DNA of 64,000 bases from Pavona decussata (Eukaryota). A model generated the notes under the pieces. The model was not told where the DNA came from, ran no database searches, and worked only from the letters and a program-made list of their open reading frames with translations. Below are positions 9,327-10,781 of the stretch, piece after piece (within the stretch, counting starts at the first letter, position 1; every line of letters starts with the position of its first letter). The stretch spans positions 4,030,001 to 4,094,000 of the forward strand of contig CDRNST010000060.1 in the NCBI GenBank assembly GCA_977016875.1. Reading direction: 5' to 3'. The translations under genes were made by a program, and so were the position numbers.

Positions 9327-10781
9327 TCATTCTGGAGACTCTGATCTCCTCACAAGTTCAGCTTCAGTTTTTGCCACCAGCTCTGGAGCTCTAAAACGAC
9401 TTCCCTTTAATGCCGTCACTAGTTCTTCCAAACACAAATCACTCAAGTTTGAAAAGTTAATGAGGAGAATCTCATCAGTTAACTTACCAAAAAGTTGTTC
9501 TGAAAGGAGCCCAGCATCAGTGTAAGCTCGGAGGAATCTCACAACCTGCTGAGGTTCATAAACTGAGAGGTCCTGATAAATAAGGTGATTTTCTATCAGT
9601 TTGAACAGATCACGGATGTAATTTTTAGTCTTGGCAAAACCATTTACAATCATGACTAACCCAACTGGTGCAAAGTCAAGTTTTCCACGCTCAAGGATCT
9701 CTGAAGAAATTTCTTGAAAAAGATCAGGGGATCGAATATTTTGCTGAGCATAAGAGCTTGCAATTTGAGCCATTTGCTTGTACGTAAAAGATGTAAGACC
9801 ACGCCGCAGGATTTCCAACTTGATACATCTGAACAGGGGTTTCACATTCAATCCAACTTCTGCATAAGACCACAGAATGATTGTTAATGACCTCTCTTCA
9901 AATTCAGTCAGATCGCGTTTCATGATCTCCTCTCGCAAGGCAGCAAAAAGCTTAGCACCTTTCTCCAGTGTCCGCGCAAAGGACCATAAAAACTGGCATA
10001 TTTCCTTGACTTGGAAAGTTGACAAATCTCTAGCCATTATTTCATTTCTTATGAACTTGTACAGTAGCCTTGCACTGAACTGTGCCTTCCCATAAGCCCA
10101 CAGTATCATGGCAAGATCAGTGTTTGAAAACCAACGGGGATCGCGGCTCCTTATTTCCTTGTCAAAGTGAATGAAATATGACAAGTCCTTGAGTCCCAGA
10201 GTTGCAATTCCATGCACAGTACTTGCCAAATGGGTGGGTTCGCACAGGTTACTGTTCCATCTGATCATATTGACTAGGTGGACTGTAGCAGCCATGACTC
10301 GGCCATCACTGGTAGACCTCTGGCTTGACTGACGTGTTGCCAACAAAGCAAAGCGATGGAACAGCGCCACTAGGGCGTAGAGCACAGCTAGTTTATCAGG
10401 ATCAATCTTTGACCCGTCCTTTAGGGCGTTATAAATCTCCAGTAATTCATCAGGATCTGTCTCCGTCTGTATTTTTCGCACAATGTCGAAAGAACTCGCC
10501 AGCTGTTCTCCTTTAGAATTTGCTCTTGATTTCGTCTGTAGATCTTCGAACATTTGTAGCAGCCGTCCATTCATTCGCCTTGCAACATGGAAGTTCCTCG
10601 TAGCGTCCGCAAGAATAAGGAGAGTACGCTGAAGATTTCCTAAACTCGTAGCGGGTTTATGTAGAGCTGATGAAACTGTCCTTCCCACATGAAAATTTAA
10701 ATAATGAAATTGGGATAGCGAAGTAAAAGCATTTCTTGCCTGGAAATTTCTCCACTTCTGAATGAAATTTATGCGGAACAT
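9327..10781 (-). CDS. Intronless 484-aa protein with 8 tandem 38-aa helical repeats (OPR/HPR/FASTK-like), putative mitochondrial RNA-binding protein
   Basis: Single long ORF. The N-terminus is R/S/F/L-rich with almost no acidic residues over the first ~75 aa (presequence-like). Residues ~180-484 are eight 38-aa units, consensus F-x3-(D/E/Q)L-x3-(L/I)W(S/A)(Y/F)A...LF-x5-EI-x2-R. No C-terminal RAP domain is visible. Confidence 0.8.
   Translation of the reverse strand: MFRINFIQKWRNFQARNAFTSLSQFHYLNFHVGRTVSSALHKPATSLGNLQRTLLILADATRNFHVARRMNGRLLQMFEDLQTKSRANSKGEQLASSFDIVRKIQTETDPDELLEIYNALKDGSKIDPDKLAVLYALVALFHRFALLATRQSSQRSTSDGRVMAATVHLVNMIRWNSNLCEPTHLASTVHGIATLGLKDLSYFIHFDKEIRSRDPRWFSNTDLAMILWAYGKAQFSARLLYKFIRNEIMARDLSTFQVKEICQFLWSFARTLEKGAKLFAALREEIMKRDLTEFEERSLTIILWSYAEVGLNVKPLFRCIKLEILRRGLTSFTYKQMAQIASSYAQQNIRSPDLFQEISSEILERGKLDFAPVGLVMIVNGFAKTKNYIRDLFKLIENHLIYQDLSVYEPQQVVRFLRAYTDAGLLSEQLFGKLTDEILLINFSNLSDLCLEELVTALKGSRFRAPELVAKTEAELVRRSESPE

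What the first reader, a model, noticed from the sequence alone, without database searches (positions are those of the whole stretch)
9327..10781. Intronless animal gene for a pure 8 x 38-aa OPR-type repeat protein with a presequence-like N-terminus and no RAP domain: candidate anthozoan mitochondrial RNA-processing factor
Seen in sequence: residues ~180-484 (nt 10244-9330) divide without gaps into seven exact 38-mers plus a 39-aa last unit. They begin CEPTHLASTV, FSNTDLAMILWAYGK, FQVKEICQFLWSFAR, FEERSLTIILWSYAE, FTYKQMAQIASSYAQ, FAPVGLVMIVNGFAK, YEPQQVVRFLRAYTD and LSDLCLEELVTALKG. Positions F1, L6, W11-S/A-Y/F-A, L23-F24 and E30-I31 are conserved. The protein ends right after repeat 8, and the N-terminus is basic and acid-poor. 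Established: 38-40-aa OPR repeats (Chlamydomonas chloroplast factors) and 37-aa HPR repeats (apicomplexan/dinoflagellate mitochondria) are helical RNA-binding modules. The animal relatives, FASTK/FASTKD, have irregular repeats plus a C-terminal RAP domain and process non-tRNA-flanked mt-RNA junctions. Hexacoral mtDNA encodes only about two tRNAs and has group I introns (nad5). Inference: this RAP-less array could read a short mt-RNA sequence to guide tRNA-independent processing, stabilisation or group I intron splicing. Being intronless among very intron-rich neighbours suggests retroposition or horizontal acquisition, for example from an alveolate or bacterial source.
Basis: partly seen in the sequence, partly recalled or inferred. 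Interest (0 to 1): 0.78.

Follow-up and report, generated by a model that had tools for sequence, protein, structure and literature searches.

The report
Coral mitochondrial-type OPR repeat protein gene
A stony-coral gene without introns encodes a protein built from eight regular 38-residue helical repeats, of the kind that binds organelle RNA in algae and parasites. It is one of at least 13 such genes in this genome, a family size not reported before in an animal.

Summary
Window 9327-10781(-) is an intact 484-aa ORF. Residues 180-484 form seven 38-mers plus one 39-mer; similarity at lag 38 is 0.72, against a maximum of -0.25 in 2000 shuffles.

The AlphaFold2 model is an alpha-solenoid with eight helix pairs in that register. 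Its best solved matches are trypanosome RESC6 and the OPR/HPR proteins of algal and Toxoplasma mitoribosomes. There is no RAP or FAST_2 domain.

Orthologues all end at the same conserved C-terminus. They include Montipora XP_068682339 and Nematostella LOC5518979. dN/dS is 0.13-0.35, and microsynteny is kept between two coral genomes.

RNA-like public contigs from four studies lie colinear across almost the whole ORF. One runs through the stop into the 3'UTR, so a hidden RAP exon is unlikely.

The genome holds about 13-14 intact and 5-6 broken single-exon paralogues. All intact ones have basic, acid-poor N-termini, and some sit in tandem clusters. The scan flagged such a protein before on another piece of this genome (s1-482363).

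Mitochondrial RNA binding is the best reading (about 0.6) but is inferred, not shown. Horizontal transfer is not supported.

The parts
9327..10781 (-). Complete single-exon coding sequence, 484 codons plus a TGA stop at 9327-9329
   Evidence: ORF list. It is identical to protein P0001, called on other long contigs. dN/dS is 0.13-0.35 against five orthologues. All 9 indels seen in the RNA-like contigs lie below 9327, and none lies in the ORF (table 4).
10566..10781 (-). Residues 1-72: the presequence-like, disordered N-terminus. It has no D or E before residue 59 and net charge +7 over residues 1-58.
   Evidence: Composition. pLDDT is below 50 for residues 1-72. Orthologues are mostly alike: 14 of 18 have no D/E before residue 27, and the M[LF]R start aligns across them. 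The intact paralogues share the property. No targeting predictor was available.
10245..10565 (-). Residues 73-179: an N-terminal helical cap, or degenerate repeats, with no 38-residue periodicity
   Evidence: AF2 helices H73-87, H90-106, H110-121, H131-151 and H160-175. No lag-38 signal in residues 73-179.
10131..10244 (-). Repeat 1 (residues 180-217), the most degenerate unit
   Evidence: Register; helix pair H182-195/H201-211.
10017..10130 (-). Repeat 2 (residues 218-255)
9903..10016 (-). Repeat 3 (residues 256-293)
9789..9902 (-). Repeat 4 (residues 294-331)
9675..9788 (-). Repeat 5 (residues 332-369)
9561..9674 (-). Repeat 6 (residues 370-407)
9447..9560 (-). Repeat 7 (residues 408-445)
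9330..9446 (-). Repeat 8 (residues 446-484, 39 aa). It carries the C-terminal stretch around TEAELVRRSE, mostly invariant in 18 orthologues.
   Evidence: Alignment A1: residues 473-480 are invariant apart from one near-invariant position. All orthologues stop within a few residues after it.
8407..9326 (-). 3' untranslated region, at least this long, with an AATAAA at 8380-8385 just beyond it
   Evidence: A 2108-nt RNA-like contig of run X1 lies colinear over 8407-10528, passing the stop codon (table 8). Sequence read.
9148..9318 (.). A 37-nt tandem repeat, 4.6 copies, in the 3'UTR directly after the stop codon
   Evidence: Tandem Repeats Finder.

Best explanation
This is a nuclear, single-exon, transcribed coral gene. 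It encodes a mitochondrion-targeted alpha-solenoid of the OPR/HPR helical-repeat superfamily (Pfam RESC6; distantly FAST_1).

After a cleavable basic presequence and a helical cap, eight regular 38-residue helix-turn-helix units stack into a superhelix. Its inner face most likely reads a short single-stranded stretch of one mitochondrial RNA, on the order of 8-11 nt if one repeat reads one base as in PPR proteins.

The protein has no nuclease domain. It would therefore act by binding: defining or protecting a transcript end against exonucleases, holding an RNA in a processing-, splicing- or translation-competent form, or recruiting a separate enzyme.

It is the slowly evolving, single-copy, Hexacorallia-wide member of a family that has expanded in corals to about 13-14 intact single-exon genes.

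Shown: the gene, its repeats, fold, family, conservation, transcription, lack of RAP, and the paralogue family.

Inferred: mitochondrial location, RNA binding, and the kind of RNA step served.
For: Fold and family:
- The precomputed Pfam hit is PF26188 RESC6.
- The profile of 18 orthologues matches T. brucei RESC6 (8fn4_6) at E=6e-9. It matches Toxoplasma mitoribosome RAP proteins and Chlamydomonas mL115 weakly.
- The AF2 model has pLDDT 79.6, and above 90 over most of residues 170-480.
- Foldseek top hits are RESC6 (E=2.5e-9), Toxoplasma mitoribosome proteins and Polytomella/Chlamydomonas mitoribosome proteins, then PPR-RNA complexes.
- ESM Atlas fold matches have TM 0.64-0.73 to RESC6/FAST_1/RAP clusters, including chordate FASTKD3 at 0.66. 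Feature matches agree.
- Nearly all close structural relatives are mitochondrial RNA-binding proteins.

Targeting-like N-terminus:
- There is no acidic residue before position 59, and net charge is +7.
- This property, rather than the sequence, is kept in 14 of 18 orthologues and in the intact paralogues.

Constraint and expression:
- dN/dS is 0.13-0.35.
- Indels among alleles fall only in the UTR.
- RNA-like contigs from four studies cover the ORF.

Candidate specificity positions: repeat positions 3, 5, 8 and 28 differ strongly between repeats (2.4-2.75 bits) yet are conserved within each repeat across orthologues (0.57-0.77 bits). This pattern is expected of base-reading positions.

Context from the literature:
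- All hexacoral mtDNAs carry a nad5 group I intron that encloses 2-15 genes.
- tRNA punctuation cannot apply where mt tRNA genes are scarce (PMC5633667; PMC5474008).
- HPR/OPR proteins act in organellar RNA stabilisation, processing and ribosome assembly (PMC6212722).
Against: - No targeting predictor, localisation data or RNA-binding data exist.
- The runs used for expression are only guessed to be RNA, and the contigs stop 5-23 nt short of the ATG.
- Alpha-solenoids of this fold can also be protein scaffolds: Polytomella ATP-synthase subunits appear among the fold hits.
- Hexacoral mt rRNAs are not fragmented, so the best-documented structural role of OPR/HPR proteins, holding rRNA pieces together, does not obviously apply.
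- The link to tRNA loss or to the nad5 intron is a correlation recalled from the literature, not tested here. I could not establish whether octocorals or medusozoans have the family.
Confidence: 0.6

Rival explanations
1. The protein is an integral or assembly subunit of the coral mitoribosome. It would bind rRNA, as the OPR proteins of Chlamydomonas/Polytomella and the HPR/RAP proteins of Toxoplasma mitoribosomes do, rather than serving as an mRNA-specific factor.
For: Most of the top 30 solved-structure matches are chains of those mitoribosomes. The profile weakly hits mL115 and Toxoplasma LSU RAP proteins. Single copy, Hexacorallia-wide conservation and dN/dS near 0.2 fit a core housekeeping part.
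Against: Those ribosomes use solenoid proteins to hold fragmented rRNAs (title and abstract of PMC8660880, listed). To my knowledge hexacoral rRNA genes are not fragmented. Fold similarity among solenoids is generic.
Confidence: 0.15
2. The protein is a protein-protein scaffold with no RNA role, mitochondrial or not. Examples would be a HEAT/TPR-like adaptor or an ASA-like subunit of a respiratory complex.
For: Polytomella ATP-synthase chains (6rd4_2, 6rd5_3) are among the fold hits. There is no direct evidence of RNA binding.
Against: Sequence-level kinship is to RESC6/FAST_1/HPR families, not to HEAT or TPR. The repeat-specific but orthologue-conserved positions fit a reading code better than a generic scaffold.
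Confidence: 0.1
3. The gene was acquired horizontally, from a dinoflagellate symbiont, another alveolate or alga, or a bacterium, or is a recent retrocopy. That would explain its lack of introns.
For: It has no introns among multi-exon neighbours. The highest-scoring non-cnidarian relatives are algal and dinoflagellate proteins (Mesostigma, Polarella). A bacterial RAP/RESC6 cluster exists in the Atlas.
Against: - GC is 0.41-0.42, like the surrounding DNA.
- Exon-sized flanking blocks are colinear between two coral genomes.
- Orthologues occur in Montipora and in Nematostella.
- The orthogroup is a 100%-supported clade outside the protist RAP clade.
- Protist hits are only 19-31% identical, and many of them carry a RAP-type tail that no cnidarian member has.
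- All about 14 paralogues lack introns, so any retroposition or transfer would be ancient and family-wide.
- The tree does not resolve deep relations, so an ancient transfer into early anthozoans is not excluded.
Confidence: 0.07
4. It is an ordinary FASTKD orthologue whose FAST_2 and RAP parts lie in unrecognised downstream exons.
For: FAST_1 matches weakly. The fold resembles FASTKD3 models.
Against: - A 2108-nt RNA-like contig runs colinear through the stop codon and 920 nt beyond, with no joint leaving the ORF.
- All 18 aligned orthologues end within a few residues of the same largely invariant C-terminal motif.
- No RAP or FAST_2 is found in any cnidarian member scanned.
- The only RAP-like six-frame hits in the genome are sub-threshold and lie on other contigs.
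Confidence: 0.03

Closest known systems
RESC6 (Trypanosoma brucei RNA-editing substrate-binding complex protein 6; Pfam PF26188)
   Same: It is the best sequence-profile match among solved structures (E=6e-9) and the best fold match (E=2.5e-9, TM 0.54-0.62). The precomputed Pfam assignment is RESC6. Both are mitochondrial-type alpha-solenoids of similar length.
   Different: RESC6 works inside a kinetoplastid-specific guide-RNA/mRNA editing scaffold that animals lack. Identity is only about 14%. The coral protein has a strictly regular 38-residue period.
Octotricopeptide repeat (OPR) proteins of Chlamydomonas and other green algae, such as TBC2, TDA1 and mitoribosomal mL113-mL119
   Same: Both have tandem 38-residue two-helix repeats forming a solenoid. 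Both form nuclear gene families for organelle RNA. Fold matches include Chlamydomonas and Polytomella mitoribosome chains. Clustered, diversifying paralogues recall the algal NCL cluster, cited's reference list.
   Different: The hallmark PPPEW motif is not recognisable. At most a degenerate P-x-L-F appears at repeat positions 21-24 in some units. The host is an animal, and the presumed target organelle is the mitochondrion only.
Heptatricopeptide repeat (HPR) proteins of Apicomplexa and dinoflagellates
   Same: Many HPR proteins are RAP-less, mitochondrial, RNA-binding helical repeat proteins (PMC6212722). Toxoplasma mitoribosome members are among the top fold hits.
   Different: The period is 38, not 37. 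The lineage is animal. PMC6212722 reports only a few degenerate members in animals, and in humans all six are FASTK proteins.
Animal FASTK/FASTKD0-5 family
   Same: They belong to the same superfamily. FAST_1 matches weakly here and above cut-off in orthologue P0011 and three other cnidarian family members (two of them paralogues in this genome). TM is 0.66 to a chordate FASTKD3 cluster. FASTK proteins are mitochondrial RNA regulators.
   Different: [quoted passage not shown] Its repeats are regular rather than degenerate. Family size is about 14 in this coral, against 1 in roundworm, 2 in fly and 6 in vertebrates.
Pentatricopeptide repeat (PPR) proteins, including the clustered restorer-of-fertility-like genes of plants
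   Same: Both are largely intron-poor nuclear families of organelle RNA-binding solenoids, with tandem clusters and pseudogenes. PPR10 and designer-PPR RNA complexes appear among the fold hits at E around 5e-4.
   Different: PPR has a 35-residue unit with different motifs, and no sequence-level match was found. The plant parallels rest on my own knowledge and were not tested here.

Membership tests
Pfam RESC6 (PF26188) / RESC6-FAST_1 helical-repeat superfamily | A significant match to the family profile | tested here: met
   The precomputed PF26188 hit is unmarked, meaning E<=1e-5, for this exact protein. The orthologue profile hits solved RESC6 at E=6e-9. The local Pfam copy lacks this model, so I could not rescore it myself.
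Pfam RESC6 (PF26188) / RESC6-FAST_1 helical-repeat superfamily | An alpha-solenoid fold of stacked helix pairs | tested here: met
   The AF2 model has 8 regular helix pairs plus a cap. Foldseek and Atlas matches agree.
OPR (octotricopeptide repeat) proteins | Tandem repeats of 38-40 residues, each a helix pair | tested here: met
   Seven 38-mers plus one 39-mer without gaps. Lag-38 autocorrelation is 0.72 against a shuffle maximum of -0.25. Helix pairs.
OPR (octotricopeptide repeat) proteins | The PPPEW (or degenerate P..W/F) signature within the repeat | tested here: inconclusive
   There is no PPPEW. P at position 21 or 22, followed by L23-F24, occurs in 2-3 of 8 units. The review read notes that about a quarter of algal OPR units also lack the motif.
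OPR (octotricopeptide repeat) proteins | Organelle targeting and RNA binding | not testable with these tools
   Only the composition of the N-terminus could be examined.
HPR (heptatricopeptide repeat) proteins | A 37-residue repeat unit | tested here: not met
   The period is 38, with peaks at 38, 76 and 114.
FASTK/FASTKD family | A FAST_1 motif over the Pfam cut-off | tested here: not met
   There is no FAST_1 hit in this protein. Orthologues score 15.7-19.1 bits, below the 27.4 cut-off, except P0011 at 28.8. Among ten further cnidarian members, three score 30.1-30.7 bits (L006, L010, P0085); the others that match score 19.0-24.6 bits.
FASTK/FASTKD family | A FAST_2 motif | tested here: not met
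   No hit in 17 cnidarian members scanned.
FASTK/FASTKD family | A C-terminal RAP (PD-(D/E)XK-like) domain | tested here: not met
   No RAP hit was found. The protein ends in repeat 8 with a C-terminus conserved in 18 orthologues. An RNA-like contig passes the stop colinearly.

The most novel reading that the evidence does not exclude
Hexacorals have evolved, uniquely among animals studied so far, a PPR/OPR-style toolkit of a dozen or more sequence-specific, RAP-less helical-repeat proteins. These would replace tRNA punctuation. Each paralogue would mark one junction, transcript end or intron segment of the tRNA-poor mitochondrial transcripts, including the giant gene-bearing nad5 group I intron.

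This gene would be the ancient core member. The tandem clusters with amplified repeat blocks and pseudogenes would be a fast-evolving arm, as with plant restorer-like PPR genes or the algal NCL cluster.
Probability: 0.3. Interest if true: 0.8.

Novelty: new member of a known kind. Interest (0 to 1): 0.58.

Why it matters
How cnidarian mitochondria cut and stabilise their polycistronic transcripts is an open question. They have only one or two tRNA genes, and hexacorals splice a nad5 intron that contains up to 15 genes (PMC5474008, PMC5633667).

Lineage-specific families of organelle RNA-binding solenoids are known from plants (PPR), green algae (OPR), alveolates (HPR) and kinetoplastids. In animals the related FASTK family is small, always carries RAP and has degenerate repeats.

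A conserved, regular, RAP-less OPR-like protein, within a family of at least 13 genes in a coral and with members in the tractable model Nematostella, gives concrete candidates to test. The regular repeats may also help in deriving an OPR/HPR recognition code, which is still unknown.

I found no paper describing this family in cnidarians. Databases list the members as 'uncharacterized' or give automatic labels such as 'RESC6 domain-containing' or 'FAST kinase leucine-rich domain-containing'.

Tried and rejected
- Local Pfam scan of the protein: only a chance-level DUF2949 hit. The local library lacks PF26188, and the genome search refuses that accession.
- Six-frame whole-genome searches with RAP, FAST_2 and FAST_1 models returned nothing at E<=0.01. 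These negatives are uninformative. FAST_1 found none of the paralogues that hmmscan does hit, and the controls did not ring.
- At E<=10, RAP gave only sub-threshold exon-sized hits on other contigs.
- Group I intron model RF00028 on the whole genome, meant to locate the mitochondrial contig and count its tRNAs, found no match. The mtDNA features are therefore cited from the literature only.
- A 171-aa ORF at a similar distance downstream in two coral loci looked like a synteny marker but is unrelated. Synteny was shown by blastn of the flanks instead.
- A word search with a paralogue profile, meant to learn the taxonomic range, was saturated by scleractinian hits. The named ones were Stylophora, Orbicella and Oculina. 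It says nothing about octocorals, medusozoans or other phyla.
- The family tree (quick method, repeat proteins of unequal length, 570 of 1641 columns) does not resolve relations among the query orthogroup, the large coral clade, a Nematostella clade and the protist RAP clade. No origin can be read from it.
- No FASTKD sequence was available by reference, so no direct profile comparison or joint phylogeny with bilaterian FASTKDs was made.
- No complex prediction was run, because no binding claim is made.
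Full report
**1. The observation**

The window holds an intact ORF at 9327-10781 on the minus strand, 484 codons from an ATG. A stop lies three codons upstream of that ATG.

The periodicity is not a matter of eye. BLOSUM62 autocorrelation over residues 180-484 peaks at lags 76, 38 and 114 (0.78, 0.72, 0.61). In 2000 shuffles, the best value over all lags averaged -0.55 and never exceeded -0.25.

Units are only 10-34% identical pairwise (mean 21%).
- F at position 1.
- An aliphatic residue at position 6.
- W/x at position 11, then S/A/G, Y/F and A at positions 12-14.
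- L23-F24.
- E30 and I/L31.

Residues 73-179 show no 38-residue signal. The N-terminus has no acidic residue before position 59 and net charge +7 over residues 1-58.

**2. Fold and family**

The local Pfam library gave nothing above chance, because it lacks the relevant model. The protein database carries a precomputed PF26188 (RESC6) hit for this exact protein. Orthologues give weak FAST_1 hits, one of them above the cut-off.

A profile of 18 orthologues (A1) matches solved T. brucei RESC6 at E=6e-9. It matches Toxoplasma mitoribosome RAP proteins and Chlamydomonas mL115 weakly.

AlphaFold2 on A1 gives mean pLDDT 79.6:
- Residues 1-72 are disordered.
- A helical cap follows.
- From residue 182 there are eight helix pairs in the 38-residue register.

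Foldseek against the PDB ranks RESC6 first (E=2.5e-9). Next come chains of the Toxoplasma, Polytomella and Chlamydomonas mitoribosomes, other RESC subunits, two Polytomella ATP-synthase subunits, and then PPR-RNA complexes.

The ESM Atlas agrees by features and by shape. TM is 0.64-0.73 to clusters carrying RESC6, FAST_1 and often RAP, including chordate FASTKD3 at 0.66.

The protein is therefore a member of the OPR/HPR/RESC6/FASTK helical-repeat superfamily. It has the regular 38-residue period that defines OPR proteins.

**3. No RAP domain and no intron**

No RAP or FAST_2 match exists in this protein, in six orthologues or in ten other cnidarian members.

All 18 aligned orthologues end within a few residues of a largely invariant C-terminal motif. 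A missing exon would therefore have to be missed in every species.

Fourteen small public runs from four studies hold part of the stretch. They are labelled RNA only as a guess. Four were laid on 7800-12800, and they behave like RNA:
- They leave 10806-10972 and 11307-11473 empty.
- All four break at 7864 into the same foreign sequence, as at a splice site of the neighbouring gene.
- Between them their contigs lie colinear over 8407-10776.

One 2108-nt contig runs from inside the ORF through the stop codon to 8407 without a joint. All nine indels relative to the window lie in the 3'UTR, and none lies in the ORF. The contigs end 5-23 nt short of the ATG, so the 5' end is not fixed. The aligned M[LF]R starts of the orthologues support this ATG.

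The gene is a single ORF in five other coral assemblies too.

**4. Whose gene, and how conserved**

A 70%-identical cluster contains XP_068682339.1 from Montipora capricornis, labelled 'uncharacterized protein'. The exhaustive profile search finds Nematostella vectensis LOC5518979 at E=1e-91 over profile positions 97-476. This is XP_032219555.2; a member of the same 90%-identity cluster is UniProt A7RP37, auto-named 'RESC6 domain-containing protein'. The host is thus a stony coral, and the orthogroup spans Scleractinia and Actiniaria.

Pairwise dN/dS among six coral orthologues is 0.13-0.35.

Flanking DNA of two coral genomes, whose orthologues are 73% identical, shares about nine colinear, exon-sized blocks on each side at 80-90% identity. 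This shows vertical descent and multi-exon neighbours. Fragments of an ABC-transporter ATPase (5093-5455) and a Rap-GAP (16047-16784) in the window fit that picture. GC matches the surroundings.

**5. The gene is one of a family**

Six-frame searches of the 602-Mb genome with this protein and with two paralogues give a convergent list of about 19 loci. After fetching them I count 13-14 intact single ORFs of 401-1304 aa and 5-6 copies with stops or in pieces.

Every intact copy starts with a basic, acid-poor segment. It continues with the same cap and 38-residue units, and ends without RAP.

- Three copies 87-92% identical lie within 20 kb on contig C263.
- Five loci lie within 155 kb on C15.
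- In two of the C15 loci, a block of about 116-126 residues (three repeats) is amplified roughly nine-fold.

Other corals also carry several members per contig. Nematostella has further paralogues: A7SDR9, A7T628 and EDO26814.

In a quick maximum-likelihood tree, the query's orthogroup, including the Nematostella protein, is a 100%-supported clade. It is separate from the large coral clade (96), from a Nematostella clade and from a protist RAP clade (98). The deep order of these groups is unresolved.

The query is only 25-30% identical to the other paralogues. It is the old, slowly evolving member. The clusters show birth-and-death evolution.

The scan's other note on this genome, s1-482363 ('Animal OPR-like helical repeat protein with mitochondrial presequence and no RAP domain', 1206 letters), fits the 401-aa paralogue on C6. 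That gene is 1206 nt including its stop.

**6. The wider superfamily**

The profile finds 2937 representative proteins at E<=1e-3, and 231 at E<=1e-30. Named examples are Mesostigma (a green alga) and a Polarella (dinoflagellate) RAP protein.

Many of the presumed non-cnidarian hits are alanine-rich and end in a RAP-type tail. All are only 19-31% identical to the family members of this genome. The cnidarian members have low Ala and Pro content and no such tail.

High scores for protists reflect their many regular repeats, not close kinship. Nothing here supports a recent transfer. An ancient one cannot be excluded.

**7. Mechanism**

Shown: an expressed, constrained, RAP-less OPR-type solenoid with a presequence-like N-terminus, whose nearest structural relatives are almost all mitochondrial RNA-binding proteins.

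Inferred: import into mitochondria, binding of a short single-stranded RNA segment along the inner face, and action by occupancy rather than catalysis.

One supporting pattern: repeat positions 3, 5, 8 and 28 vary strongly between repeats (2.4-2.75 bits) but are conserved within a repeat across orthologues (0.57-0.77 bits). This is expected of base-specifying residues.

Literature read here gives the biological need:
- tRNA punctuation cannot operate in many non-bilaterian mitochondria.
- All hexacorals have a nad5 group I intron enclosing 2-15 genes (PMC5633667).
- Octocoral mt-RNA processing without tRNAs has no known protein factors (PMC5474008).

Which RNA step this particular protein serves is unknown. 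It could be end definition, stabilisation, splicing, translation or ribosome assembly. I put about 0.6 on a mitochondrial RNA-binding factor. A further 0.15 goes to a mitoribosome subunit or assembly factor specifically, and about 0.1 to a non-RNA scaffold.

**8. Comparison with what is known**

- It works like OPR/HPR proteins.
- It is a member of the RESC6/FAST_1 superfamily by profile and fold.
- It meets the OPR definition by period and helix-pair structure, but lacks a recognisable PPPEW motif.
- It fails the HPR period.

Published counts for animals are one FASTK gene in roundworm, two or three in fly, and five or six in chordates. HPR repeats in animals are described as few and degenerate.

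Two full-text searches found no paper linking OPR, HPR, RESC6 or FASTK proteins with cnidarians.

**9. Verdict**

The added finding is that this gene belongs to a coral/anemone family of single-exon, RAP-less OPR-like genes. That raises its interest above that of a lone orphan.

It is a new member of a known kind of protein in a lineage where that kind was not known to be expanded.

Noticed in passing
G000 contig C15, 3,726,000-3,882,000 (loci L010, L018-L021): Five paralogous single-exon OPR-like loci lie within 155 kb. Two of them (around 3.752 Mb, a 1304-aa open frame, and around 3.814 Mb, broken by stops) carry a block of about 116-126 residues (three repeats) amplified roughly nine-fold. 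The locus at 3.796 Mb has stops near its 3' end. It looks like a birth-and-death cluster.
   Followed up: partly
G000 contig C263, 68,957-88,486 (L005, L009, L017): Three tandem paralogues of 561-567 aa, 87-92% identical, all intact with presequence-like starts. C101:97.6-99.2 kb and C382:2.608-2.610 Mb carry a near-identical 575-aa copy, either haplotigs or a very recent duplicate.
   Followed up: partly
G000 C51:4528474-4528545(+), C166:2018070-2018150(-), C166:1888790-1888867(-): Sub-threshold, exon-sized matches to the middle of the Pfam RAP model (22.5, 19.9 and 18.8 bits). The translations of the first two were read and contain a G-Y-hydrophobic RAP-like core. They may be exons of canonical, intron-bearing FASTKD-type genes, which would mean the coral has both kinds.
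   Followed up: partly
window 9148-9318: A 37-nt tandem repeat, 4.6 copies at 76% matches, directly after the stop codon in the 3'UTR. Alleles in the RNA-like contigs differ here by small indels.
   Followed up: no
window 11474-12800: Summed contig depth reaches about 3000 in all four RNA-like runs, with many short contigs, multiple placements and ragged joints. It looks like a multi-copy, transcribed repeat or transposon upstream of the gene.
   Followed up: no
window 7864-8135: All four runs carry a contig that fits from 7864 onward and continues before it into the same sequence, which is absent from the stretch that was laid (7800-12800). This behaves like an exon boundary of a neighbouring spliced gene ending within about 300 nt of this gene's 3'UTR.
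   Followed up: no
window 10826-10836 (minus strand): An ACATGGCGGCC motif lies about 50 nt upstream of the ATG. It resembles the ATGGCGGC box seen near transcription starts of housekeeping genes in other animals (my recollection, not tested).
   Followed up: no
window 5093-5455(+) and 16047-16784(-): Open frames with a partial ABC-transporter ATPase match (26.9 bits, Walker A region only) and a partial Rap/ran-GAP match (20.7 bits). These are exon fragments of multi-exon neighbours.
   Followed up: partly
G000 C8:1521231 and C279:10181 (L031, L032): Long open frames of 463 and 215 aa picked up by the RAP model at about 19 bits. L032 carries a CxxC-containing, Vsr/PD-(D/E)XK-like stretch. They look like mobile-element proteins, not FASTK relatives.
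   Followed up: no
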